A stretch of 63,731 nucleotides of DNA, counting the filler, from Octopus bimaculoides (Eukaryota), in assembly GCF_001194135.2 (NCBI RefSeq). It is 5 parts of 5 records of this genome, joined end to end, with 100 filler letters (N's around TTAATTAATTAA, not from the genome) between each part and the next. Parts side by side here need not be neighbours in the genome. Positions count along the whole stretch, not along the records: positions 32,930 to 59,916 come from NC_068987.1; 4 more parts are not named here. One strand, given 5' to 3'. The notes beneath the pieces are model-generated. The model was not told the origin of the DNA. It ran no database searches and saw nothing but the letters and a program-made list of their open reading frames with translations. Positions 33,140 to 59,245 of this stretch are shown here, piece by piece. Within the stretch, counting starts at the first letter, position 1. The number at the start of each line of letters is the position of its first letter. A program made the position numbers and the translations under genes.

Positions 33140-33345
33140 TTTGTTTTTCACGCCAGACTACAGAATCATTTCAAAGAAAAACAGGATTAAGTCATGAATT
33201 GGCTAAACATCGGATGTTTAACTCATGACCCATTAAGATTACTTTCTTATTTATCATTTATGTTCTAAAACAAGTAGTGGCCAGCCGAAATTTATAATAA
33301 ACAGGACTATAAAGTCTTAGAACCGCTTCTCAAATGATTCAATTT
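33140..33345 (+). repeat. Unclassified dispersed repeat, diverged inverted partner at about 36860-37060
   Basis: AAGTCATGAAT...TCGGATGTTTAACTCATGACCCATTAAGATTA...TTCTAAA aligns with the reverse complement AAGCCATGAAT...TCGGATGTTTAACCGTGATCCATTAAGACTA...TTCTAAA. Confidence 0.6.
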
Positions 33346-33931
33346 AATTAGATATTTGTTTCAGTGTGTGCTCCTGGCCTGCCACCGGAACATGTAATTA
33401 CTGGTATTGCAATCAATTCCACTTTTCTAATCGAATTAATCAGTCATTTAGCAAATGTTGGTCTACGAAGAAATATATATTGATTGAGCAAATCTTATCA
33501 CACGTGTAAAATAATGAGAGTCCTTCTTATCTGTCTGTATGTGGCTGTGCGTGTGTGTGTTATGTATGAGTGCGTTTGTGTGTGTGCGTTTGTGCATGCG
33601 CGTTTTTGTGTGCGGTGTTTGTGAATGTGTATGATATAAATAGGGTAAAATCATGCTATGTGTTTATGCGTTTGTAGGAATGTATTTGCCATTTTATCTC
33701 TCCAGTTCTCTTTCCCTCTCACACTGAATACTGTGTAAGACACGATAAGAGGGAGAATGAGAAAGTAAGAGAGAGAGGATAGGGATATATAAATGGAGAG
33801 AGAAGGTCAGAGAAGGGAGAGAGAAATAGAATGAAAGAGAAAATGAGAGAGGGGACAGGGCAATAGTAAGGAAGAGAATAATATCTTGTACATGTATGGA
33901 GGAGAAGTGAGAGCATGAGTAAATGATCAAG

Positions 33932-34529: not shown

Positions 34530-34849
34530 CATATATATANNNNNNNNNNNNNNNNNNNNNNNNNNNNNNNNNNNNNNNNNNNNNNNNNNNNNNNNNNNNN
34601 NNNNNNTATATATATATATATGTATGTATGTATGTATGTATATTTTGTCAGTGAACAGGTCGCGGTCTCAAAGCGACGAAAATATTTTGACAAATTAAAT
34701 TTAAATGTTGAAGTGAATCTGACGGCTTTTGTGTGTTATTTTAAATGGCTTATAAACACCTTCCACGCTGCAATTATATATATATATATACATAAATACA
34801 TACGTACCTACATTCATGCGTAAATACATACATACATATATAAATACAA

Positions 34850-36111: not shown

Positions 36112-36335
36112 GCAGAATCGTTAGCACGCCTGGCGAAATGCTTAGCGGTGTTTCGTCTGCTGTTACGTTCTGAGTTCAAACTCCGCTGAGGTCGATTTGC
36201 CTTTCATACTTGTGGCGTCGATTAAATAAGCACCAGTTACGCGCTGAGGTCGATGTAATCGACTTAAACCATTGGTCTGTCCTTGTTTGTTCCCTCTATG
36301 TTTAGCCCCCCCTTCTGGACAATAATGAAATAAAT
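36112..36335 (+). mobile_element. SINE family B head and core with an alternative tail
   Basis: GCAGAATCGTTAGCACGCCTGGCGAAATGCTTAGCGG...GAGTTCAAACTCCGC...GTCGATGTAATCGACTT, then TTGGTCTGTCCTTGTTTGTTCCCTCTATGTTTAGCCCC. CpGs are retained. Confidence 0.8.
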
Positions 36336-37828
36336 ATCTATGGTTACAATTAAAAGAAGGAAGAAGTTATTTTGGGCAAATACATGTGCTGTACGTAAGA
36401 GTTTAAATACATTTCACATACTTGAGCCTACACTTGCTGACCTCACCCATCACTGCATGAATACATTCAGTTAATTTTGATATAAATATATGAGTTGTAT
36501 CCGCTGCTTTTTTAATCATAATTATTCATCAAGCTAATGATTTCTCCCTCCCGACGGATGAAATTTTAATTAACAATTAAAAAAAAGAACGTTGATCACA
36601 CACACACACACGTATGCACGCGCACGCACACATTCACACACACATATATGCACACGAACACACTCAAGCACACATAGGAACACATATTAGGTTACATTTG
36701 TGACAAAAAGTTAATTAATATAATTTTTTTATAGAATTCCTGTATAGACCAAAAATTGTTAAATAATTGACTCGATTAGAAAAGTGAAATCGATTACAAT
36801 ACCAGTAATTATGTTCCGGTGGTAGGCTATGGGCACACACCGAAACGAATATCTAATTAGGGTGAATCATTTTAAAAGATGGCTCTTCAATTTTACAGTT
36901 TTATTTTATGCTACTACTAGTTGCTAGTTAATTTAGAATATAATTGACAAGTAAGACACTAGTCTTAATGGATCACGGTTAAACATCCGAAATAAAGACG
37001 ATTCATGGCTTGATCTCGTTTTACAAGGATATCTGAAGTTCTGAAACACTGATGCACTGAGCTTGAAGAATGCTCAGACATTTTCACGTTTCGAATTCTT
37101 TGAAAGCCATTTTATACTTCAAATAACTTCGAACGTCTGAGGTATGCACAAATGCTCAGAAACGAGTGTTTTTATTTTCTGTTGTTCTTCGTATTGATGG
37201 TTTTATATTGATGTTTGCTCTGAAGAAAAGGAGAAACATTTTCGTAGGTCTTGATGCTCTTGGAATACTTACAGCTAATTTCATTTTTTAAAGCACAATG
37301 CAGTAGCAACCATTTCAAAAGAATTTCCTCTGATAATCCAGCACTCTGCCCTGTACTGGTAAAATATATATCAATTCTGGAAGTATAAAGAACAAAGTTG
37401 ACGTCATCGGGAATACACTCAGATGGAGGGAAGACGAAACACTGACAAAAGTCACAAAAATGTATTGGGCATCCCTATATTCAGTAGGTTAACACCCATC
37501 TATATACAGAGAATGTAGTGAAATAATTATTGCCACATTTAATGTGAGGAGATTAATATAATTAAACTAGAAGTAAGCTTGTGGTAAGTAAATAAAAAAA
37601 GAATTAAAAACAGTCTATGACTGAAATAATTGTGATAATTTCGATACTTGTCTAAGAACACGCTGGTCATGTTTCTGTATCTTATGAAAACCATACTTAG
37701 CGAAATGTAGACATCAACGGAATCACATATGAAATCTGAGCACGATCATTAATTCAATGCATAATAAATTACACTGGAAGCCATAGAAAACGAGAAATAA
37801 ATTGTGTACACATTTCACAGCTTATGTT

Positions 37829-37895: not shown

Positions 37896-39369
37896 TTATG
37901 ACAGCTTCATTCATGTATATATCCAATATATCTGTCGCATTTTGTCTACGTGCGTTGTAATGCAAAATAAAAATGATCAATAATTTTATGTCTTTGGGAA
38001 AATCCTAATTTATGTGACTACAATATATTATTTTGTAAACTAGAATTTAGTATATGTGTGATTCTATGTTTATTTACCTATAAAAGGGCATAATTGTTCA
38101 TGTGTATTCCAATATAAATCAACCATAGTCTACCTCTGTGATAAAAGTAGCATTAAAAAATGATCAATAATTCTATAACTTTAGTAAAAACCACTTAGTT
38201 CAGTATATTTTTGTGTATTAGTATTAAGTATATTAAGATTATAATGTCCATTGCGTGTTTGTATTTCATATTTTAGGGTCATGCACTGAAATACAGCACA
38301 TTACTTCAACTCAATTTATATAGGTTAAATGACTTTGTTAGTATGGTCCATTATTCAACAATATTTTATGGGTTTCCAATAGGAAACATCGAATTATATG
38401 CGCGTTTCGGTATCCAACATTATTCGGCTAACGGCATAGTTTACATCTAAATAAGTCTGAATAATTTAGAGTTTGAAAAAGTAAAGTCTGCTCTAAATTG
38501 AAATGTTTGAGTTTAGTAAAAGAAATCAGAAAATATTTAATGAGAATAGTAGATTCAATATTTCTTAACTCTGAGGAAATAATATATAAAATTATACGAA
38601 AATTAATGGCACTAGTTTGAAACTAAAAACATTAATCTTCCTTGAGAAGAACTATTTACGCTAATATATTTTTATTTGAAATATATCACAATATCATATT
38701 CATGATGGCGTAGGTATCAAATAAAGGTATAGAAATTCTTTAAAATATTATAANNNNNNNNNNNNNNNNNNNNNNNNNNNNNNNNNNNNNNNNNNNNNNN
38801 NNNNNNNNNNNNNNNNNNNNNNNNNNNNNNNNNNNNNNNNNNNNNNNNNNNNNNNNNNNNNNNNNNNNNNNNNNNNNNNNNNNNNNNNNNNNNNNNNNNN
38901 NNNNNNNNNNNNNNNNNNNNNNNNNNNNNNNNNNNNNNNNNNNNNNNNNNNNNNNNNNNNNNNNNNNNNNNNNNNNNNNNNNNNNNNNNNNNNNNNNNNN
39001 NNNNNNNNNNNNNNNNNNNNNNNNNNNNNNNNNNNNNNNNNNNNNNNNNNNNNNNNNNNNNNNNNNNNNNNNNNNNNNNNNNNNNNNNNNNNNNNNNNNN
39101 NNNNNNNNNNNNNNNNNNNNNNNNNNNNNNNNNNNNNNNNNNNNNNNNNNNNNNNNNNNNNNNNNNNNNNNNNNNNNNNNNNNNNNNNNNNNNNNNNNNN
39201 NNNNNNNNNNNNNNNNNNNNNNNNNNNNNNNNNNNNNNNNNNNNNNNNNNNNNNNNNNNNNNNNNNNNNNNNNNNNNNATATCACTAGTTCTTAATCTAG
39301 TGAACACTAACTGTGTGGAAGACACGAACATGAAGAAATTAAAATTAAACATATGTAGCCTTATGCCTA

Positions 39370-39779
39370 GCAGCCCAAGCAGGAGAACCCAGTCATGGCT
39401 GACAGATAATTTCTGAGACCACATCAGCCCTAACATCTGGCCACCCAAATCTCCGGACTACACACCCTTTGATTATTATGCCTGGGACGCAGTTGGTCAC
39501 GAGGTCACGAAAATTCCTTGGAATCGACAAGATGAACTGAAGGCAAGAATTAAGGTAACATTCACCAACTTAAACAAGATCATCCAGTAGATGTGCAAAA
39601 TATTTCGAAGTCATCTGGAGACCGAGTTTCAAACCAATGGCAAATTTATTAAATGAATTTACTCTTTAGTATTTCAAGATATTTCTATGCAATTTTGGTA
39701 AATGTATCTGCTAAAATGAGAAAATAGTGTTATTTTCCTTTTTGAGTAATTTAGACGACAATATATTCACCGCATCCTG
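39370..39779 (+). mobile_element. maT/DD37D-like transposon 3' end, same family as 8511-9378
   Basis: SRRTQSWLTDNF*DHISPNIWPPKSPDYTPFDYYAWDAV...DELKARI..FTNLNK..FRSHLE...NGKFIK*. The 3' UTR and TIR (..CACCGCATCCTG|TA) are collinear with the reverse complement of 8513-8670. Confidence 0.85.
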
Positions 39780-47620: not shown

Positions 47621-49421
47621 TATGTCCAAGTTATTTATTATGTTATATAATTTCTAGCCCGATATATCTGTTTCATGTTAGCTGAAAGGGAAACGTATCA
47701 GAAATACGCCAGAAAATTTCAGTATAATCACACTACAGACTGCTTAGGTGTGGATTGCAAATTTCAGAACTTCCTGGCATAATGCCACGCATCATGAAAT
47801 AATAGAACTACTCAACATGTATCATGTCACTTACAAAAGCGATAATATCTCTGACACCGGCCATATTGATTAGAGCATTGACTAAAAATCGAGTGAGAAA
47901 TAATGTGCAAATTTTTTCAAGTTCTGCTCTTCTTACGACATGAACTACAGAATATTTGGCTTACGTTAAAGTTGTGCATCATTCTCCTGAATTCGCTCAC
48001 GTAATTTGACAAATAAAAGAGTTTTAAATTTGTGTTAGGAGAGAACTCGTGGTGTATCTGAATAGTTTGTGGAAGAAATTGTGTGAGGTTATGAACAGTG
48101 GATGTATCACATCGAACTGGGGTATGAAATGGAAATGTCAGCATTCCCCTATCAGGAAATTTTCAAATCTGGAGAGGTTATGCCGACAGTGCTTCAGTGG
48201 TTTATTTTAGGACGGGATGTGATGGTTCGTGGGGACCAATTCATTATTAGGATCTAACAGTAAACTGTTATTTGAATTGCAATGCGCTTTGCTGCAAGGT
48301 GACGCCAGTACTTTCATGCAAATGCTGACTACTCTAGAGACACGCTGTGGTATTGTAAGACCATTTTGTTCCCAAAATGTTGCTCAATCCATTAAAATCC
48401 ACTGGGAATTGAAATTCGAGAATTTGAAGATTACTTCATATAATTCTACTCTTGCCATTATCGTTCATTTCGGATTCACCTTCCGAAGCCTTCAATTTAC
48501 CGCAACTCAAGATCCAAAGGTAGCATGTAGACTTCGTCATAATTTAGCTGAAATATATATATATTACAAATAACGGGAATATATTGAAAACAGAGGTAGT
48601 GGTATATCAAGAATTATATACTTGTAATAATAAATATATAAAAAAAAAATATTTTATATGGTGGCGCCTCAGCATGGCCACTAACTTTGGCTGAAATAAG
48701 TGAATATAAAAATATTACGAAAAATAGGTCACTGGTCATTATAGTTTACCGAGCAAATGAAAGCAGAATTTTATCAACAACATCAAAAGCAAATATTACA
48801 ACGCGATCATCATTATCAGTTGTATGATCAAGGAAAACAGCATCACCTAATCATTAACTTTACATTGACAACAACAAAAGCAACAACAGCAAAATAAACA
48901 AAAACAGCGAATAAAACAAAATACAGCACGAATTATTTTATTTTCAGGTATATACATTCATCGTCGTGAATAGAGAGAGACGACGATTAATGATGCACGT
49001 ACAACTAATTTCCCGTCAATAGGAAAGATAATTACAAGTGCAATGCAGATAAAAGGATGACACCCCCTTTTTATAACACAATTTAAAATATCCAATTATG
49101 ATTCTGCGGCTGAGGAAAAGTTCCTACACTTTTGTTTGGATTCAATTTCCATCGCACTAATATGAAGTTTTACTTCAGATACTAGAACTTTCTCATATAA
49201 TCATTCTATTTCTGTACATACATATACACACACGCATATATAAATGTCTGTCTGTAGGTGTACGCGTGAGTATTCATGCTTATATATGTACATACATATA
49301 TAAATATATAAGTAAATTCAAAAAAGGATAAAACTCTTTTACAATAATTTTATCAAGAAGCCAGTGTGTAAAAAAATTCATAAGGGAAATTTCTATTCCC
49401 AAGAATATAATTATTCGTTTA

Positions 49422-49592
49422 TATTTATATAAAGGGCATTATTACAGAAAAATAATAATGCCACACAGTGGACTTCTCAAAATAACCACATTTAGTACCT
49501 AATGCGAGGATTATGGTACTAAATGTGGTTATTTTGAGAAGTCCACTATGAGGCATTATTATTTTTCTGTAATAATGCCCTTTATATAAATA
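49422..49592. repeat. 171-bp foldback palindrome (MITE-like)
   Basis: Arms 49422-49499 and 49515-49592 are complementary except for a small internal mismatch; short loop around GCGAGG; TA-rich flanks. Confidence 0.85.
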
Positions 49593-49847
49593 AATAAATA
49601 CATATATATATACAAACGCTGGTCAGTAGGTAGGTAGGTGCTTATGTATTTATGCATGTATGTGTGTATGTATGTATGTGTATAGCAGCGGTGAAATGAA
49701 GATTCAAATACATTTATCGAATTAGATATATTAGATATGTACACAATCCATTAAGAAGCGTACAATAATATTCACCGAAAGATTACATTCCAGGCTTTTA
49801 GCTTAGATGGCTACTCAACAGGTACACTTCTGACAGCATAAATATTG

Positions 49848-50258
49848 TTTTCTATTCGAGGAACATGGCCCGAAATTTTGGGGAAGGTAGCCGGTCGATT
49901 AGATCTATCCCAGTACGCAAATGGTACTTAATTTATCAACCCTGAAAGAATGAAAGGCAAAGTCGGCCTCGGCGGAATTGAATTTGAACTCAGAACGTAA
50001 AGACAGACGAAATACCACAAGGCATTTTACCCGGTGTGCTAACGTTTCTGCCAGCTCGCCACTTTAAAATATTCTTTTCTGCTCAAGTCACAAAACCAGT
50101 CGATTAGGTCTATCCCAGTACTCAACTGGTACTTAATTTATCGACCCCGAAAGGATAAAAGGTAAAGTCGACCTCGGTGGAACTTGAAAGTAAAGACAGA
50201 AGAAATACATCTCAGCATTTCGCCCGGCGTGCTAACGTTTCAGCCAGTTTGCCGCTTT
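49848..50258 (-). mobile_element. Tandem pair of family B SINEs flanked by a 17-bp direct repeat
   Basis: Two B monomers (about 49848-50070 and 50074-50258). TGACAGCATAAATATTG occurs at 49831-49847 and 50259-50275. Confidence 0.85.
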
Positions 50259-51016
50259 TGACAGCATAAATATTGATGTCCGAATTGAAGTTCCTTTTAT
50301 TCCGTTTATGGGAAATTTGATGAGAACTTATTCGTCGTATGTTCAACGCATAAGAAAGTTTGCTCGTTACTACGTGGCTCGTTTCCTACAAAAGAGCTAT
50401 AAAGTCGAACAATCAATGTGATGACTTACAATTCGACTAACAATTTGTGGGATTGTCCACAACTTTTCTGTCCACAGCGTGATGATGTTAATCTCTTACC
50501 AATGTTTTCGGTAGAACTATACCATAGGTTCTCAAAGATGGCGCTACCACCTTTCGGTGGGCGTTGAGACGGTTCAGGTGGGCACTGTTGTCTAAGGGGT
50601 GATGCGAGGAAGGGGTGGTAGAGAAAAAGGAGGCATTGGGAAGAAGGCAGTGGATTGGGGGAAGGTATGAATTTATAATATTGTTATAGTATTGTATACA
50701 CATATCATTTTATATTAGATATAAAATAATTCATAGTATATATAAATTTGTGAAATCTAAAATATTTATTTATGCATAACAATAGGGGTGGGAAGCGATG
50801 AGCGTACTATGTGGCCATTAGGGGGCAGTGGCCCCACAATTTTGAGAACCTCTGAACTATTATATCACCGGGATTTAAAACATTTGTAATTTTTCTATCC
50901 TATAATTTTGTGGTTCGGTAGTCCTCGATATTGTCGATATCTGCAAACATTCAAAACGATGTCTGAGAGACATTAAGCATTCTTGTTCAGAGAAATGTAG
51001 CATGATTTGTTGGAGG

Positions 51017-51070
51017 CAGGGTTTTCTCGACATTCAGGGTTCTCTCGGTATTCAGGGTTTTCTCGATAAT
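51017..51070 (+). repeat. 18-bp tandem repeat x3 (CAGGGTTTTCTCGACATT)
   Basis: Units start at 51017, 51035 and 51053. Confidence 0.8.
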
Positions 51071-51718
51071 AAGACTGTTCTGGTTGTTATTACTGAGAAT
51101 AGTCTTAAATCTTTCTTTAATAAGATTTAAGTTAATAATGGACATGACTGAATGCGACGGATGGATTTAATATTTTGATTCCTTTCATCGACAAAGGACA
51201 GTAACAGTTGTATCCTAAGAATACTGCTATAACAGAAATGAAATAAAATCATAGTTATATTGGGAATAGACGTGGAAGAAGAATATCTTATATTTAAAAA
51301 AATATCCACACGCTATTTCTTGTTAGTCATAAAACGTCACTTCATCAATCTTAAGTACTACTCTGGACGAAGCATATTATGTCATTTACTGTGAATAAAG
51401 GAATGAATAAATGAATACTTAATTGATTAAAGTGATATTTCTTCGTACTGTTATCTCTTATTAATTATTTACTTGCTATTTAAAGATATATATTCGAATT
51501 TAAATAGAAAATCTTTTACAAGGCGAGCATGTGTTACATAATGGAAAAAAATGTTTAAGTCATTTCATGTTTCGCAGAAAATGCATAGGATGTACGACTC
51601 GTCTTCAACTACCATGCATTTATAAATACCCATTTCTATATGGATGACGTATATAAGTATACACATATATACATGCATACATATATGTATATATGCATAT
51701 TTTTACACATGCACACAC

Positions 51719-51875
51719 ACAAACGTTTCTGCTACGATTCAGTGCACGCTGCAAAATGTTGCACCTTGGCGTGCATTCTGGTGTTAATTGCCGCATCTTT
51801 TTTCCAAAATATTTGGGTTGGACTTATATTTAGTTCAGATGGAAGCTGAAATGCAGTTAATATTACCTAGAAGCA
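51719..51875 (+). repeat. Left arm of a 157-bp inverted repeat
   Basis: Reverse complement of 52729-52885; 3 mismatches counted by eye. Confidence 0.9.
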
Positions 51876-52728
51876 CACACATACATCTCCCTCCTTTACT
51901 CTCTCTCCCTTTGCTCACGCGTGACCATCGTCTATCTTTCTTTTCATCACGTGCTCATCTTTCTTTCATTTCAGGGCTGTCATACAGGCTAGACGCATCC
52001 TATCTACCTCTCTCTTCTATCATTTCTCTTGTCAAAGAAAATATTTCTCCAGCGTTCGTTATTTTACCCGCGTTCTGGTCTAACAACCCTACATGTTTGT
52101 TTTCGTTCAGTCTCCTTGTATGTCCCCACTGTCGTTCTTGTTCCCAACTTTGACCCTCCATAAATTCCAAATTTTATTTTGGTATTTATGGGAGTAACTG
52201 CCTTCGAAGGCTCATATTGTCGTTCAGTACCCAAAATGAGGAGTAGATAGGCAACCGACACATGACGAAAGGTCGTTCTGTATGTTACTTGTCCTATTTT
52301 TCATATGTTTCTCTCGTTGTGTGCGTATTCAACTCATTTGTTTTCATATTTCATGTTGTTTATTGTTTGTGATGTATTGTGCCGATATGTTCATATATAT
52401 ACACAGGTAAATTTGCAAATTTGGCTGGTAAGAACATACAATCTTATCGGGCACCGTATTTGCTTTTAGAGGTTGATAATACTGGCTAACCTCAGTGAGT
52501 ATAGAAACACTCTAATTAGTTTATTTCACTATTCTCAGTAGATCTTCACATTGGTGAACCCATATGTCTCTTCAGAGACTGCATGTTGTCGGTCGAGAAG
52601 ACACATATATCCAGTTTTATTCTGTAGTTAATCACATCTTACCATTCCTGTACCTAGATATCTTTCTACAGCAAATAAGTGAACACTGCAAAATTTTGAA
52701 TCTTGGCGTGTATTTTGGCGTTAATTGT

Positions 52729-52885
52729 TGCTTCTAGGTAATATTAACTGCATTTCAGCTTCCATCTGAACTAAATATAAGTCCAACCCAAATATTTTGA
52801 AAAAAAGATGCGGCAATTAACACCAGAATGCACGCCAAGGTGTAACATTTTGCAGCGTGCACTGAATCGCAGCAGAAACGTTTGT
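52729..52885 (-). repeat. Right arm of the 157-bp inverted repeat
   Basis: Paired coordinates sum to 104604. Preceded by a degenerate direct partial copy at about 52684-52735. Confidence 0.9.
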
Positions 52886-53023
52886 AGGTGCAGAAATGGA
52901 AAGACGTGATAACTGTAATTAAAACTGGATATATAAATCTCTGTCCTCCATATTATTAATATATATATATATATGTGTGTATGTGTGAGTGTGTGTTTGT
53001 TTTTGTGTGTGTAAAAAGGTGAG

Positions 53024-53284
53024 CCTAACAGGCCACCTTTCATGCTAAAAAGAGCAGTCAAATCCCAAACCACAGTTAAGAGTAATTTCGAAGGGAATGA
53101 AAAAAAAACATTTTCAATAGTTACCACATCTACCTAGGTTTTGAACATCAATAAACAAATAAAATAATTTGCCATCCGTGTTCTCATCAGCACCGGCGCT
53201 ACAATTAATATATATATATATATATATATATGGGACATTGCTGACAGCGTATGTTCCACCGAAATACGTTATAATTTTTCAAAT
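53024..53284 (-). repeat. Direct repeat copy 1 (LTR-like, carries a hammerhead)
   Basis: Collinear with 53489-53738, roughly 85-90% identical by eye. Confidence 0.9.
53117..53202 (-). ncRNA. Type I hammerhead ribozyme, probably inactivated copy
   Basis: Minus strand: ..GGTG CTGATGA GAACA..TGTTC AAAA CCTAGG TA GATG.. G12 is A (CpG decay; T at 53142), and two helix I pairs near the core, including the closing pair, are G-G. Confidence 0.7.
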
Positions 53285-53488
53285 CCACCGCCAAGCGCAG
53301 TTATAGTCGGCAGCAAATAAAGACGTGTGCTCGTATTCTTCAAAATTACGAAATTGCATTAAGAATATATACATAGGGTAGTAAAAGTAAAGAAATTTTC
53401 TTCGAGTCACCTAGCATGCATTAAAGAGTTAATAGATAACATATTTTTCATATAAATATAGTGTACATTTATATACAAAAGAGCTAAT

Positions 53489-53738
53489 CCTAACAGGCCA
53501 CCTTACATGCTAGAAAGAGCAGTCAAATCCCAAACCACGGTTAAGAATAATTTGGAAGAGGATGAAAAATAAAATCATTTTCAGTAGTTACCGCATGTAC
53601 CTAGGTTTCGAACATCAATGAACAAATAAAATAATTTGGCATCCGTGTTCTCATCAGCATGGGCGCTACAGTTAATATATATTTATGGGACATTGAAGAC
53701 AGCACATGTTCCATCTACATACATTATAATTTTCAAAT
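53489..53738 (-). repeat. Direct repeat copy 2 (LTR-like, carries a hammerhead)
   Basis: Collinear with 53024-53284; bounded by (TATG)n on the right. Confidence 0.9.
53584..53669 (-). ncRNA. Type I hammerhead ribozyme with intact core (predicted cleavage after GUA, between 53598 and 53597)
   Basis: Minus strand: GTAGCGCC-CATG-CTGATGA-GAACA-[cgGATGcCAAATtattttATTTGttCATTga]-TGTTC-GAAA-CCTAGG-TA-CATG-CGGTAACTAC. Helix I CATG/CATG plus CC/GG and GTAG/CTAC; helix II GAACA/TGTTC with extended hairpin; helix III ACC/GGT around TA (palindrome ACCTAGGT). Confidence 0.85.
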
Positions 53739-54631
53739 GTATATATGTATTTATGTATGTATGTATGTATGTATGTATGCATGTATGTATGCATGTATGT
53801 ATGTATTGAGTGTGATGTACAGAAATTGAATATCGAGGGGGAAAATGTCATCAGAATTTTGGAAAAAAATATCTTTTTTATTTCTTCATTATTATTAGCG
53901 CTTTCGTTCGTTATGCGAACTTGTCAAATAAAATTTTGTAAATGTACAAACAGCTTCTTCATTTATATAAAAGATATGTATTTTTTATAGTGTGGGGAAA
54001 AAGCAAACGTATTAATTGCTATGTAATAACACGTATGAATACTGATATTGCTTTACCTCTCCTAGTCTCGACTTTGATTTCTGCATAACCCTTGCTAGAA
54101 ATATAGCTTCTGAGATAAGTCAATCTATCTATGTGCTCGACTTCATCTCATCGGACATTAACAAGTTCTACTTAATCAACACAGATTGACACGATTTTAG
54201 TAATTTCAGCGTTAATCCGTAGCCTTGCTTTTGTCCTCAACGTGAATAGCCTGCACCGTATATATATCAGAACTTGCAAAATCCAAATCTGTCAATCTAT
54301 GTAGTACTCTAATTACACCAAAAATGGCGATACCCAGTTCCTAGTGCATTCTCATCATAAGGAATAGAAACGATAATTATTCGTTACTTCCATCAAATAA
54401 AGTAGTAACAGCCTATCATACCTCTCAATATATAATAGAATTATGCATTCGTTCAAAATGACAGTGAAAAGAAATTAATTTCATCTGTAACTTCAACTTC
54501 ATTATTTATACATTAGCCATTTCACATCTACCGAAAACAAATCAACGCTTCTACTGACGCGGTATTCACACACTTATTGAAATTAATAAAAACACTATTT
54601 ACAAATTGATGTACTTATACTTTACATATTA

Positions 54632-54752
54632 TTTTCTACTAGGCCCGAAATTTTGGGGGAGGGGGCCAGTCCATTAGATCGACGCCAGTACGCAACTAGT
54701 ACATAATTTTTCGACCCGGAAAGGATGAAAAGCAAAGTCGACCTTGGCGGAA
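54632..54752 (-). mobile_element. SINE family B, 5'-truncated
   Basis: TTTTCTACTAGGCCCGAAATTTTGGGGGAGGGGGCCAGTC...GAAAGGATGAAAAGCAAAGTCGACCTTGGCGGAA. Confidence 0.8.
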
Positions 54753-54832
54753 TGTTATAATTTACATATTAATATTCTTTTAATATTCTTGACTCGACTA
54801 CAAAGATTATATACAAAAAAATCGATGACACA

Positions 54833-54869
<37 letters not shown>

Positions 54870-55109
54870 NNNNNNNNNNNNNNNNNNNNNNNNNNNNNNN
54901 NNNNNNNNNNNNNNNNNNNNNNNNNNNNNNNNNNNNNNNNNNNNNNNNNNNNNNNNNNNNNNNNNNNNNNNNNNNNNNNNNNNNNNNNNNNNNNNNNNNN
55001 NNNNNNNNNNNNNNNNNNNNNNNNNNNNNNNNNNNNNNNNNNNNNNNNNNNNNNNNNNNNNNNNNNNNNNNNNNNNNNNNNNNNNNNNNNNNNNNNNNNN
55101 NTTCTTCAC

Positions 55110-55285
55110 TGCTGCTTCAAAAGCTGTGTTGGGGTGTTTACGTTCCCGTAAATTAGCGGTTTGTCAAAAGACTCTGGTGAAATGACTACCAAGCTTACAT
55201 AAAAAGAATTAGGATCTATTCATTCAACTAAAATTTCTCAAGCTCGTATCCCAGCATGGCTGCAGTTTAGTGACTGAGGTAAAAA
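55110..55285 (+). mobile_element. SINE family C, 3' half
   Basis: GTGTTTACGTTCCCGTAAATTAGCGGTT...CCCAGCATGGCTGCAGTTTAGTGACTGA. Confidence 0.65.
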
Positions 55286-55763
55286 AAAAATATGTGGGAA
55301 AAGAAAAGAAAATGTAACTATTAAGTTCATTTTTAACGATTATATTAACATTTATATAGGAAATAATTTTACGACTATAGGATTAACGTTATTGAATAGT
55401 GAAAAATTTTATCGACGTAACTATTAAAAGACTATTAAATTTACTTTTAAATAAATATCGTGCATAAAACATTGAACGAAGAGAAAATTAGAAGAAAACT
55501 TGTAAAATGTTTCTGAAGCACTGATTAAATGTTTACGCTATTTTTCAACAAGATAATGGTTTATTAACGCATTATTTAATGTAGATCTTCGGTAAATATT
55601 ATTGGTTATTTCTAGTGGCATACACTCTAACTGACGTGTTTCAAAAACTTAAGACTTTGCAATAAATATATAAAGAAAGCTTTTAAAGGAAACCTAACCA
55701 GTTCTCATGCATATTTCATCGCAACTTCCTCTTTTGGTAACATGAAAGTTTTCTTTTTTATGT

Positions 55764-55764
55764 A

Positions 55765-55820
<56 letters not shown>
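55764..55820. repeat. (TTA)n microsatellite
   Basis: About 18 units. Confidence 0.95.
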
Positions 55821-57399
55821 TTCTTTTTAAAATATTTAAGTATCGATTATAGTTTTACTTCGAATTCCCTGCAGAGAAAAACTATGACTTAACTATACCA
55901 ATTCTAAGGACATACATTACTTGCTAAATATATACTACTGAATACCAAGAAGAACAATGGAAGCGAAAAGTGAAAATAAATATCTTCACGTAGGATATAG
56001 AGGTTAGCAGGACTAGCCTCAGGAAGTATTGAGGCAAGAAAAAGGAAGAATTCTTTGAAAAACTAAATTAAAATTTCATTGTTTAATCATATGTGTGTGC
56101 TTGCATGAAACACACACACACGCACATATATACATGAGTGTGTTTACAGGAATGCACGTATAATTGTATTCGTGTGTATATATTTTTATATAGATGCATA
56201 TACACATACGCCCACACACGCCCACACACGCCCACACACGCCCACATACGAACCCCCACCACCCCACACACAAACACACACTCACACACATATATATATA
56301 CTTCTAATTGTTGTTTCTCTTGTCCGCCTTTGTGTCGTCTATCTGTCCGAACGTGTTAATGCCTCTACTGCGTTTTTGTTCCATTTATNNNNNNNNNNNN
56401 NNNNNNNNNNNNNNNNNNNNNNNNNNNNNNNNNNNNNNNNNNNNNNNNNNNNNNNNNNNNNNNNNNNNNNNNNNNNNNNNNNNNNNNNNNNNNNNNNNNN
56501 NNNNNNNNNNNNNNNNNNNNNNNNNNNNNNNNNNNNNNNNNNNNNNNNNNNNNNNNNNNNNNNNNNNNNNNNNNNNNNNNNNNNNNNNNNNNNNNNNNNN
56601 NNNNNNNNNNNNNNNNNNNNNNNNNNNNNNNNNNNNNNNNNNNNNNNNNNNNNNNNNNNNNNNNNNNNNNNNNNNNNNNNNNNNNNNNNNNNNNNNNNNN
56701 NNNNNNNNNNNNNNNNNNNNNNNNNNNNNNNNNNNNNNNNNNNNNNNNNNNNNNNNNNNNNNNNNNNNNNNNNNNNNNNNNNNNNNNNNNNNNNNNNNNN
56801 NNNNNNNNNNNNNNNNNNNNNNNNNNNNNNNNNNNNNNNNNNNNNNNNNNNNNNNNNNNNNNNNNNNNNNNNNNNNNNNNNNNNNNNNNNNNNNNNNNNN
56901 NNNNNNNNNNNNNNNNNNNNNNNNNNNNNNNNNNNNNNNNNNNNNNNNNNNNNNNNNNNNNNNNNNNNNNNNNNNNNNNNNNNNNNNNNNNNNNNNNNNN
57001 NNNNNNNNNNNNNNNNNNNNNNNNNNNNNNNNNNNNNNNNNNNNNNNNNNNNNNNNNNNNNNNNNNNCTAGTTCTGTTGCCGTGTGCGTATTTGCGTGTT
57101 TATATGTAAGCGGAGGTGTTCAATATTGCCAGTGTAGCCAATATGTTGAAACTGTCATTACGTGAAACTTTTACCATGTATTTTGATCAGTACATATAAA
57201 CATATTCATATATATAGCTCATATTTTAAAGCTGGTGTCTACAGTTGAGTTTTCCAGCTTAGTTTGATGTCTGAAATGTTGAAGTTTATTTATCAATAAT
57301 TTACATTTTTGTGTCTTCACAAAAGTCAATACTAATGTTTCAAATTTTGTATTGCAATTTTCTATTGATATGAAGTAAGAGTTCTCTGATGAGCAATGC

Positions 57400-58600
57400 T
57401 TTTCTTTTGCACTTTGTCTTCCGCAGAAATTGTCCCTGCTAGACATAACGCAGGGTTCTAGAACGATAAAACTCACACCGAGTGAACCTTGGATGTATGG
57501 ATTCAATGAGAGGAACACAAGTGGGCGATACTTGTGATATGGTAAGTTCCCGAATAAAGAAAAGATTCTCTGGGAACTGAATGCGCTTCAGCACAAATGT
57601 CTTATGTGATGAGAGTGTGGTAATACGAGGATAAAACAAAATCTTCTAGGCACAACTGTTTGTAGCATTGGCTTCGGACTTATCAGGCATACAGTTTTTG
57701 GATGGCTGCAATTTAACGGTTGTATGGTTTTGGTGCATCCAAAATTTGTGGCAACATAATGGAGGCTCATACTCTCACATTCGGATTGTAAGGTTGGGAA
57801 TCTTTTAGTTCAAGAGATTTACGAAATTGTTTTATCGTAAAACTTAACATCAACTGCATTCTGACCTTGAATGCATCTCTGAGATTGCGGTGGCATCTAT
57901 CTTTACCTTGCCCATATTATGCAGCACAATATCATTTGGACGTATGAACGCAGTGCTCAAGAACTGATAAGATAATTATCTCTATAAACGTGTGTGTCAC
58001 TAGAATAGAGTTTCTGTAGAATTTCCGAGGTGTTGCATTGATGTTTCGATATATTTGTAATATACTGACTTACTAAACACATTGCCATTGTACAGCAAGC
58101 TCAGAGTATTCTTAGAAACTAGGGTGCTGAGATTTGTTTAAGATGTGTAATTTTCGTGATATTAGAAACAGATAACTCGTTCTCATTTCTAAATATAAGA
58201 TGTTTTGATGTCTTGCAGTTATATTATTTGCAAGGAATGAAAGGCGTTATTGTATGGTTCCACATATGATATTAGTGTTACATCGGATAGTTAAGAGTTG
58301 TGAAAGAGACCTCCAATGCATATCGGTGACAACTGCGCATCCATCATTTAGACACAGGACTAGATTTGTGCAATTTCGAGCCGGATCTGAAAACGCAATT
58401 TAGTAGGTCAACTGTTAGCACTTTTATCGGATTCTAATATTAGGCCTCATAGAATACTCTTTGCCAAAATATTTCTATCGAAATGATTTTCCTTTTCTAC
58501 CATAGGCATGAAGAAAATGTATTCTTTTCGTGTCAGAAATACTCTGATACCTGTATAATTCGATTTCGTTTATGTGTGATTCATGTTGTTGGTCATGTTG
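57400..58600 (-). mobile_element. Helitron RepHel (Pif1-like) helicase fossil
   Basis: Minus strand, in order: IHFLHAYGRKGKSF (~FFLDAPGGTGKTF, Walker A, 58481-58519), ASIMLPQ (~RAILAPK), CLISPKPMLQTVV, FYPRITTLSSHKTFVLKRIQFPENLFF (~FIPRIPLIPSD.PF.FKRLQFPVRLAF), IHPRFTRCEFY (~PCFSHGQLY). Confidence 0.65.
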
Positions 58601-59039: not shown

Positions 59040-59245
59040 TTCCAATTTTGACACAGTCACAGCAAGTTCGGGGGAGGAAGTAAGTCGATTATATCGGCCC
59101 TAGTACTCAACTGGTACTTGTTTTATCGACGCCGAATGGTGGAGAAGTAATTCGATATGGGTGGAATTGCAACTGAGAACAAAAACTCGGTCGAAATGCC
59201 GCTAAGCACTTTGCCTGGCGTGTATTGATTCTGCCAGCTCATCAC
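59040..59245 (-). mobile_element. SINE family B
   Basis: GGGGAGGAAGTAAGTCGATT...CAACTGGTACTTGTTTTATCGAC...GAAATGCCGCTAAGCACTTTGCCTGGCG...TTCTGCCAGCTC. Confidence 0.8.

What the first reader, a model, noticed from the sequence alone, without database searches (positions are those of the whole stretch)
53024..53738. Retrozyme-like unit: two hammerhead-bearing direct repeats 467 nt apart
Seen: repeats 53024-53284 and 53489-53738 (about 85-90% identical by eye) flank a ~205-bp unique core and are bounded by microsatellites. Each has the hammerhead at the same position, with predicted cleavage sites at 53597 and 53130. No ORF is present. Established: retrozymes are non-coding retroelements whose tandem hammerheads release a monomer that circularises, and they are thought to be mobilised by Penelope-type reverse transcriptases. 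Inference: this is a 1.5-mer genomic copy of a cephalopod retrozyme or a Penelope pseudo-LTR tandem, predicting a ~467-nt linear or circular RNA in its intact ancestor. A Penelope endonuclease remnant lies at 32.6 kb, across a scaffold join.
Basis: partly seen in the sequence, partly recalled or inferred. Interest (0 to 1): 0.87.

Follow-up and report, generated by a model that had tools for sequence, protein, structure and literature searches.

The report
Decayed hammerhead-ribozyme tandem repeat (retrozyme-like)
This is a worn-out, non-coding 1.5-copy tandem repeat whose minus strand carries a self-cleaving hammerhead ribozyme motif, intact in one copy and mutated in the other; it looks like a fossil of a known class of small animal retroelements and is a real but fairly ordinary find.

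Summary
Two direct repeats (53013-53284 and 53478-53738) are 84% identical with gaps and 87-90% without. They flank a 193-bp core and sit between microsatellites, with a period of 455-467 nt. No ORF or protein domain is present.

The hammerhead lies on the minus strand. The 5' copy (53669->53584) has a complete type I motif:
- core CUGAUGA and GAAA, with a G10.1-C11.1 pair;
- a 2-bp helix III capped by the palindromic loop CUAG;
- GUA at the cleavage site (53598|53597);
- 27 base pairs in total.

My descriptor scan found only this hit in the piece, against 0.0015 expected. The 3' copy has the general-base mutation G12A and two broken helix I pairs, so it is not an intact hammerhead. The locus can no longer release a 467-nt RNA.

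No Rfam hammerhead model matched, probably because helix II is 41 nt long. I found no other copy in the piece and no homologue in any searchable collection. No reverse transcriptase or GIY-YIG remnant lies within 5 kb.

Best reading: an old insertion of an animal non-LTR retrozyme or Penelope-like-element hammerhead repeat into a microsatellite. Retrozyme versus truncated Penelope tandem cannot be decided here, and the cephalopod origin is unverified. This is a known kind of element and interest is low to moderate.

The parts
53478..53738 (-). Repeat copy 2. This is the 5' copy in the element's own (minus) orientation and carries the intact hammerhead.
   Evidence: Direct-repeat families D2-D4; blastn 83.6%, E=3e-81; alignment A1.
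53584..53669 (-). Type I hammerhead motif, 86 nt. Helix I strands are 53669-53658 and 53597-53584. CUGAUGA is 53657-53651. Helix II is 53650-53610 (41 nt). GAAA is 53609-53606. Helix III is AC-CUAG-GU at 53606-53599. The cleavage site follows A53598 (53598|53597).
   Evidence: Sequence read. Only descriptor hit in the piece, 0.0015 expected. Hammerhead fold of 27 bp at -17.2 kcal/mol against an MFE of -18.8. The MFE fold reproduces helices I and II.
53285..53477 (-). Unique core of the monomer, 193 bp, non-coding.
   Evidence: No match to the repeats or to anything else in the piece. Stop codons in all six frames.
53013..53284 (-). Repeat copy 2's partner, copy 1. This is the 3' copy in element orientation. 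It has a (TA)12 expansion at 53208-53232.
53117..53202 (-). Mutated hammerhead relic. G12->A lies at 53142. Helix I pairs 1.1-2.1 and 1.4-2.4 are G-G mismatches. The position equivalent to the cleavage site is 53131|53130.
   Evidence: Alignment. Pair table and an energy of -8.0 kcal/mol in the hammerhead fold.
53131..53597 (-). Notional 467-nt monomer between the two cleavage positions.
   Evidence: Coordinates. Fold of -105.4 kcal/mol, z=-2.19 against 100 shuffles.
52955..53013 (.). Flanking compound (TA)n/(TG)n microsatellite.
53737..53806 (.). Flanking (ATGT)n microsatellite, 17.5 copies.

Best explanation
The unit is a fossil, 1.57-unit head-to-tail genomic copy on the minus strand of a small non-coding retroelement of the animal 'non-LTR retrozyme' kind.

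Inferred life cycle of the intact ancestor:
- Tandem copies were transcribed.
- The type I hammerhead in each unit cut after GUA. Because helix III is only 2 bp with a palindromic CUAG loop, the cut was most likely made by a double hammerhead formed between neighbouring units.
- This released a roughly 467-nt RNA with 5'-OH and 2',3'-cyclic phosphate ends, which a host RtcB-type ligase could circularise.
- A Penelope-like element's reverse transcriptase and GIY-YIG endonuclease copied it, at more than unit length, into a TA/TG microsatellite.

Shown here:
- the repeat structure and the absence of coding capacity;
- the complete hammerhead motif in the 5' copy;
- the palindromic helix III;
- the microsatellite flanks;
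- the inactivating changes in the 3' copy.

Inferred only: transcription, cleavage, circularisation, mobilisation by a Penelope-like element, and the existence of a family. About 12.5% divergence has accumulated between the copies since insertion. At most one of the two sites can still be cut, so the locus is now inert.
For: - Direct repeats with a 455-467 nt period.
- Full core in copy 2: C3-A9, G12-A14, A15.1-U16.1, H17=A and G10.1-C11.1. Helices I, II and III total 27 pairs.
- It is the only descriptor hit in the piece, with 0.0015 expected by chance.
- ACCUAGGU is a perfect 8-nt palindrome present in both copies. Cofolding two units gives -52.2 kcal/mol against 2 x -20, with an intermolecular helix III and swapped helix I strands, which is the classic double hammerhead.
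- These features (G10.1-C11.1; palindromic 15.2-16.2 plus loop 3) are the ones Cervera & de la Pena list as marks of genuine metazoan hammerheads (PMC4209133).
- 33.6% GC, a tandem arrangement and no ORF match the definition of metazoan retrozymes: 150-450 bp repeats, GC <45-50%, dimers to multimers (PMC7229834). Consensus lengths of 51-972 bp are reported in bioRxiv 10.64898/2026.07.22.740005.
- Microsatellite flanks fit the insertion bias of Penelope-like elements (PMC8557442).
- No RT or GIY-YIG remnant lies within 5 kb on either side.
Against: - No Rfam hammerhead model matches, even at E<=10.
- Helix II is 41 nt, far longer than the usual 4-8 bp.
- Contiguous helix I is only 4 bp.
- The folds are not significantly more stable than shuffles for the ribozyme alone (z=-1.06).
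- Only two copies exist, and they are duplicates of each other, so there is no independent conservation or covariation.
- No other copy exists in the 25.5-kb piece. None was found in metagenome contigs or among predicted proteins by a six-frame query.
- The hammerhead region (8 differences in 86 nt) is no better conserved than the rest of the repeat.
Confidence: 0.58

Rival explanations
1. It is not an independent retrozyme. It is a severely 5'-truncated partial tandem of an autonomous Penelope-like element. The core plus copy 1 would be the last ~467 nt (3' UTR/pLTR) of one unit, and copy 2 the last ~260 nt of the preceding unit. The hammerhead would then be the ordinary pLTR ribozyme.
For: - Penelope-like elements insert as partial tandems, are often 5'-truncated, carry hammerheads in their pLTRs and prefer microsatellites (PMC8557442; PMC4209133).
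- Most genomic PLE hammerheads are solitary remnants of truncated elements.
- Penelope elements are abundant and old in coleoid cephalopods, if that is the source (PMC8967140).
- Retrozymes and pLTRs are homologous anyway.
Against: - No RT or GIY-YIG coding remnant was found in the core, in the flanks within 5 kb, or by motif search in the whole piece.
[quoted passage not shown] That is closer to the canonical type I hammerheads of retrozymes than to the minimal PLE variant.
Confidence: 0.25
2. An ordinary local tandem duplication of anonymous AT-rich DNA, for example by slippage or unequal exchange near microsatellites, that happens to contain a hammerhead-like string by chance.
For: - Rfam finds no hammerhead.
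- The ribozyme fold is not significantly stable.
- My descriptor was written after seeing the motif, and a relaxed descriptor would give on the order of a hundred chance hits in a gigabase-sized genome (extrapolated).
- One copy does not fit the motif.
- No family members were found.
Against: - Chance expectation is 0.0015 per piece.
- That figure does not count several further features: the G10.1-C11.1 pair, the perfectly palindromic ACCUAGGU, the 7 extra helix I pairs, and the location inside a tandem repeat of retrozyme-like period flanked by microsatellites. By my estimate these together push the genome-wide chance expectation well below one.
Confidence: 0.08
3. An LTR-type miniature retrotransposon (a TRIM, or a plant-like LTR retrozyme) with two 260-bp LTRs around a 193-bp internal region.
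For: The LTR-internal-LTR geometry, and a hammerhead inside each terminal repeat as in plant retrozymes (PMC4918200, listed).
Against: - The repeats do not begin with TG or end with CA.
- No TGG-initiated primer-binding site follows the 5' repeat, and no polypurine tract precedes the 3' repeat, in either orientation (sequence).
- The hammerhead is type I, not the type III of LTR retrozymes.
- GC is 34%, not above 55%.
Confidence: 0.03

Closest known systems
Metazoan non-LTR retrozymes (Cervera & de la Pena 2020, PMC7229834): mussel, coral, axolotl and newt satellite-2 type repeats
   Same: - Non-coding, low-GC, head-to-tail repeats of a few hundred nt, each unit carrying a type I hammerhead.
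- Helix III of 1-2 bp capped by a palindromic tetraloop, implying action as a dimer.
- Dimeric to multimeric arrays.
   Different: - Only 1.57 units are present, and one ribozyme is mutated.
- Helix II is 41 nt and branched instead of about 4 bp plus a loop.
- Contiguous helix I is 4 bp instead of 6.
- The classical loop 1-loop 2 contacts cannot be recognised.
- Family size, expression and circular RNA are unknown.
- The 467-nt period is just above the 150-450 range of that paper, but inside the 51-972 bp range of the 2026 preprint.
Hammerheads in the pseudo-LTRs of Penelope-like elements (Cervera & de la Pena 2014, PMC4209133)
   Same: - Type I topology.
- G10.1-C11.1 pair.
- Palindromic 15.2-16.2 positions and loop 3.
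- A longer than usual helix II and a short helix I.
- Direct repeats, with microsatellite insertion sites.
   Different: - No RT/GIY-YIG ORF lies between or beside the repeats.
[quoted passage not shown]
- A real helix III is present, whereas most metazoan PLE variants are minimal.
Rfam Hammerhead_1 (RF00163)
   Same: Identical catalytic core boxes and three-helix topology in copy 2.
   Different: It does not reach the model's threshold and is not even listed at E<=10. The likely cause is the ~30-nt extension of helix II.

Membership tests
Hammerhead ribozyme, type I | Conserved core: C3 U4 G5 A6 N7 G8 A9 and G12 A13 A14 | tested here: met
   Copy 2 has CUGAUGA (53657-53651) and GAAA (53609-53606). 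Copy 1 fails this feature: G12->A at 53142.
Hammerhead ribozyme, type I | A15.1-U16.1 pair and a non-G nucleotide (H17) at the cleavage site | tested here: met
   GAAAC-CUAG-GUA|C in copy 2 and GUA|G in copy 1.
Hammerhead ribozyme, type I | Three helices around the core, with helix I open-ended | tested here: met
   Copy 2: helix I has 4+3+4 bp, helix II 5+4+5 bp and helix III 2 bp, 27 pairs in all. Energy is -17.2 against an MFE of -18.8 kcal/mol. In copy 1 two helix I pairs are broken.
Hammerhead ribozyme, type I | Match to the curated covariance model (Rfam) at gathering score | tested here: not met
   No hammerhead family was reported at gathering or at E<=10 on 52900-53900.
Hammerhead ribozyme, type I | Covariation or conservation of the helices among homologues | not testable with these tools
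   No homologue could be retrieved. The two local copies differ at 8 of 86 positions: three changes keep pairing as G-U, two break helix I, and one hits G12.
Hammerhead ribozyme, type I | Site-specific self-cleavage | not testable with these tools
   This needs in vitro transcription of monomeric and dimeric constructs.
Metazoan non-LTR retrozyme | [quoted passage not shown] | tested here: inconclusive
   There are 1.57 units of 455-467 nt. Only one of the two hammerheads is intact.
Metazoan non-LTR retrozyme | Low GC (<45-50%), no coding capacity, no LTR/PBS/PPT | tested here: met
   GC is 33.6%. Stops occur in all frames. No Pfam domain was found. No PBS or PPT is visible in the sequence.
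Metazoan non-LTR retrozyme | A multi-copy family dispersed in the genome | not testable with these tools
   There is no further copy in the 25.5-kb piece, and no eukaryotic genome collection was available.
Metazoan non-LTR retrozyme | Expressed as unit-length linear and circular RNA | not testable with these tools
   No transcriptome data were available.
Penelope-like element (pLTR pair) | RT plus GIY-YIG endonuclease ORF between or adjacent to the direct repeats | tested here: not met
   The repeats are 193 bp apart. No RT/EN motif was found in the piece by regex. No Pfam family matched stop-free segments of 40 aa or more in 48500-58500. Assembly gaps totalling 1.5 kb leave small blind spots.
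Penelope-like element (pLTR pair) | Insertion into microsatellites | tested here: met
   (TA/TG)n lies at 52955-53013 and (ATGT)n at 53737-53806. The bias itself is described in PMC8557442.
LTR retrozyme / TRIM | Type III hammerhead, TG..CA LTR ends, PBS and PPT, high GC | tested here: not met
   The hammerhead is type I, and no TG..CA ends, PBS or PPT are present. GC is 33.6%.

The most novel reading that the evidence does not exclude
The locus could be a worn copy of a still-unknown, active retrozyme family of its host. The family would make ~467-nt circular RNAs. Its hammerhead would carry an unusually long, three-segment helix II whose internal loop, rather than a terminal loop, contacts the helix I bulge.
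Probability: 0.25. Interest if true: 0.45.

Novelty: new member of a known kind. Interest (0 to 1): 0.3.

Why it matters
Type I hammerheads in short tandem repeats are already known in many animal phyla, in thousands to over a hundred thousand copies per genome. Their life cycle as circular-RNA retroelements mobilised by Penelope-like elements has also been described. One decayed copy adds little by itself.

It would matter modestly in two ways:
- If the source is a cephalopod and the family is multi-copy or expressed, it would extend retrozymes to a lineage where they are undescribed in the literature I could search.
- It would supply a natural hammerhead with a greatly extended helix II that current covariance models miss. 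That would be a reminder that model-based scans undercount such ribozymes.

Tried and rejected
- Rfam at gathering score on the whole piece, and at E<=10 on 52900-53900: no hammerhead. The only hits were miRNA-like artefacts on the (ATGT)n microsatellite.
- The pattern CTGATGA N{10,40} GAAA missed the motif because helix II is 41 nt. Its two other hits (34878, 57386) lack a 10.1-11.1 pair and occur at the chance rate.
- Looking for more copies: blastn of the unit against the piece gave only microsatellite matches, and a self-blast of the piece found none.
- Two exact-pattern scans of the metagenome contigs, one for the ribozyme and one for the longest conserved 22-mer, gave 0 hits.
- A 1179-aa query joining all stop-free six-frame translations of the unit, meant to catch spurious ORFs called on other copies, gave no hit at E<=10.
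- An exact look-up of the 118-aa spurious ORF found nothing on record.
- Identifying the organism through a transposase-like relic returned no candidates, so 'cephalopod' stays unverified.
- Pfam on the LINE-like and transposase-like fragments gave nothing credible. Pfam on stop-free segments within 5 kb either side gave nothing.
- The TRIM/LTR-retrozyme reading was rejected for lack of TG..CA ends, a PBS and a PPT.
- Thermodynamic stability of the ribozyme alone is not significant (z=-1.06), so it was not used as evidence.

Full report
**What is in the sequence.** Reading 52700-54100 and the repeat finder show two direct repeats, 53013-53284 and 53478-53738. They separate a 193-bp unique core (53285-53477).
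- The register offset is 465, 467 or 455 nt depending on the segment. Small indels cause this, chiefly a (TA)12 run at 53208-53232 that is 12 nt longer in copy 1.
- BLASTN gives 83.6% identity over 274 columns, E=3e-81. MAFFT gives 90% mean column identity. I measured a p-distance of 12.5% (K2P 0.137) over 257 ungapped columns plus 14 gap columns.
- The unit lies between a compound TA/TG microsatellite (52955-53013) and an (ATGT)17.5 array (53737-53806).
- It is 33.6% GC. It has stop codons in all six frames. The only listed ORF is a 118-aa frame that runs from copy 1 into the microsatellite.

**The hammerhead.** The motif is on the minus strand. In copy 2 the RNA reads: GUAG-C-GCC-CAUG / CUGAUGA / GAACA..(41 nt in all)..UGUUC / GAAA / C-CUAG-G-U-A | CAUG-C-GGU-AA-CUAC (53669->53584).
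- Every invariant position is present: C3-A9, G12-A14, the A15.1-U16.1 pair, G10.1-C11.1, and A at position 17. Cleavage is predicted between 53598 and 53597.
- A hand-drawn hammerhead fold has 27 pairs: helix I 4+3+4, helix II 5+4+5, helix III 2. It costs -17.2 kcal/mol, only 1.6 above the MFE. The unconstrained MFE already draws helices I and II.
- A type I descriptor that I wrote finds exactly this one site in the piece. It required CUGANGA, helix II of at least 4 bp and up to 60 nt, GAAA, helix III of at least 2 bp closed by A-U, H17, and helix I of at least 4 bp. In 2000 first-order Markov simulations of the piece it fired 0.0015 times per simulation.
- That descriptor is loose and was written after the fact. 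In a gigabase genome it would still give on the order of a hundred chance hits.
- However, it does not count several further features. These are the specific G10.1-C11.1 pair, the perfect 8-nt palindrome ACCUAGGU, the seven further helix I pairs, and the position inside a tandem repeat of a few hundred nt flanked by microsatellites. By my estimate these bring the genome-wide chance expectation well below one. This step is inference, not a computed value.
- Cervera & de la Pena name G10.1-C11.1 and the palindromic 15.2-16.2/loop 3 as features that argue against a random origin of metazoan hammerheads (PMC4209133).

**Against the hammerhead reading.**
- Rfam reports no hammerhead family at gathering score, nor at E<=10 on a 1-kb slice. 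The plausible reason is the roughly 30-nt extension of helix II, but it remains a failed test.
- The ribozyme fold is not significantly more stable than shuffles (z=-1.06).

**The second copy is not an intact hammerhead.** Copy 1 (53202->53117) differs from copy 2 at 8 of 86 positions.
- One difference is G12->A (CAAAAC). G12 is the general base of the reaction, and its substitution nearly abolishes cleavage. This is established hammerhead biochemistry, cited from my own knowledge.
- Two differences create G-G mismatches at helix I pairs 1.1-2.1 and 1.4-2.4.
- Three others keep pairing as G-U.
- The hammerhead fold drops to -8.0 kcal/mol.
- The claim 'each has the hammerhead' is therefore only half true. 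The hammerhead segment is no better conserved than the rest of the repeat, as expected for neutral decay after insertion.

**How it most likely worked.** Helix III is 2 bp with a palindromic CUAG loop. This is the arrangement of newt, axolotl and many invertebrate type I hammerheads, which cleave poorly alone and well as dimers (PMC7229834; PMC4209133).
- Cofolding two copy-2 ribozymes gives -52.2 kcal/mol against 2 x -20. The result has an intermolecular 8-bp ACCUAGGU helix III and exchanged helix I strands, which is the double hammerhead.
- In that geometry the core of one unit cuts the site of the other.
- In the present locus the intact core of copy 2 would face the mismatched helix I of copy 1, and the G12A core of copy 1 would face the good site of copy 2. 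Whether cutting is in cis or in trans, at most one site can be cut. No 467-nt monomer can be released today (inference).
- The notional monomer folds somewhat better than shuffles (z=-2.19, 2 of 100 shuffles as good). This is weakly in line with the compact folds of retrozyme RNAs.

**Which known kind.** The anatomy matches the definition of metazoan non-LTR retrozymes:
- low-GC, non-coding, head-to-tail repeats of 150-450 bp, from dimers upward;
- a type I hammerhead in each unit;
- no LTR, PBS or PPT (PMC7229834).

A 2026 preprint reports consensus lengths of 51-972 bp. It also shows that retrozymes are sister to the pLTRs of Penelope-like elements. Penelope-like elements insert preferentially into microsatellites and often as partial, 5'-truncated tandems (PMC8557442). 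The same picture could therefore be a truncated Penelope tandem.

At this locus no RT or GIY-YIG remnant is detectable:
- none by motif search over the whole piece;
- none by Pfam on all stop-free segments of at least 40 aa within 5 kb on either side;
- none in the core.

The ribozyme has a real helix III and lacks the unpaired base between positions 9 and 10.1 that is typical of the minimal Penelope variant. I therefore favour the retrozyme reading (0.58) over a truncated Penelope tandem (0.25). The two are related, and only family-level data can separate them. A TRIM or LTR retrozyme is rejected: no TG..CA ends, no PBS or PPT, type I rather than type III, and low GC.

**What could not be done.** No eukaryotic genome or transcriptome collection was available.
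- I found no further copy in the piece.
- There were no exact-pattern matches in the metagenome contigs.
- No spurious-ORF relatives turned up among predicted proteins with a six-frame composite query.
- The local ORF is not on record.
- The 'cephalopod' attribution is unverified, because a protein search with a transposase-like relic found no candidates. The microsatellite-rich and SINE-rich context is compatible with it. Penelope elements are abundant in coleoids (PMC8967140; PMC13282606).
- No held paper describes hammerheads or retrozymes in cephalopods.

**Verdict.** It is a decayed, inert copy of a class already known to be very abundant in animals. It rates as a new member of a known kind, interest about 0.3. 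The most novel reading still open is an active family with an unusual long-helix-II hammerhead in a lineage where none is described. I give that about 0.25 probability and 0.45 interest if true.

Noticed in passing
window 51714-51875 and 52729-52890: Two 162-nt arms are 97% complementary with 853 nt between them. Together they form a 1.18-kb element with long terminal inverted repeats (foldback or TIR-transposon-like). It ends about 120 nt from the hammerhead unit and is itself flanked by TA/TG-rich microsatellites. It shows no similarity to the hammerhead repeat.
   Followed up: partly
window 52631-52735 and 52806-52910 (within 52605-52934): An inner palindrome with 105-nt arms, 76% complementary, overlaps the right arm of the element above.
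   Followed up: no
window 36112-36266, 49891-50065, 50096-50258, 54642-54753, 59081-59237: Five copies, 70-84% identical, of a dispersed repeat of about 155 bp. Two of them are adjacent at 49.9-50.3 kb. It is SINE-like by size and copy pattern, and Rfam reports no tRNA or other RNA family there.
   Followed up: no
window 39330-39590 (+), next to the assembly gap 38754-39278: A frame reads ...RRTQSWLTDNF*DHISPNIWPPKSPDYTPFDYYAWDAVGHEV... This resembles, from my own knowledge, the C-terminus of Tc1/mariner-type DDE transposases. Pfam gave no credible match, and the protein search found no candidates.
   Followed up: partly
window 54022-54147 (-): A frame reads DEVEHIDRLTYLRSYISSKGYAEIKVETRRGKAISVF. 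This resembles the 'F.YLG..I....EI..RI.KA..AF' stretch at the C-terminal end of LINE reverse transcriptases. It lies just 5' (in minus orientation) of the (ATGT)n array that borders the unit. Pfam did not confirm it.
   Followed up: partly
window 33178-33465 and 36745-37022: An inverted pair of 289-bp repeats at 75% identity, 3.3 kb apart.
   Followed up: no
window 49405-49607: A 203-bp stretch that is 89% self-complementary, i.e. a perfect-hairpin-type palindrome.
   Followed up: no
window 53737-53806: Rfam E-value mode lists mir-297, mir-3149, mir-1277 and other miRNA-like matches, all far below gathering score. All fall on the (ATGT)n microsatellite and are low-complexity artefacts.
   Followed up: yes
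window 34540-34606, 38754-39278, 54870-55101, 56389-57067: Four runs of N (67, 525, 232 and 679 nt) are assembly gaps inside the piece, mostly next to microsatellites. Anything hidden there, including possible retroelement ORF fragments, could not be examined.
   Followed up: yes
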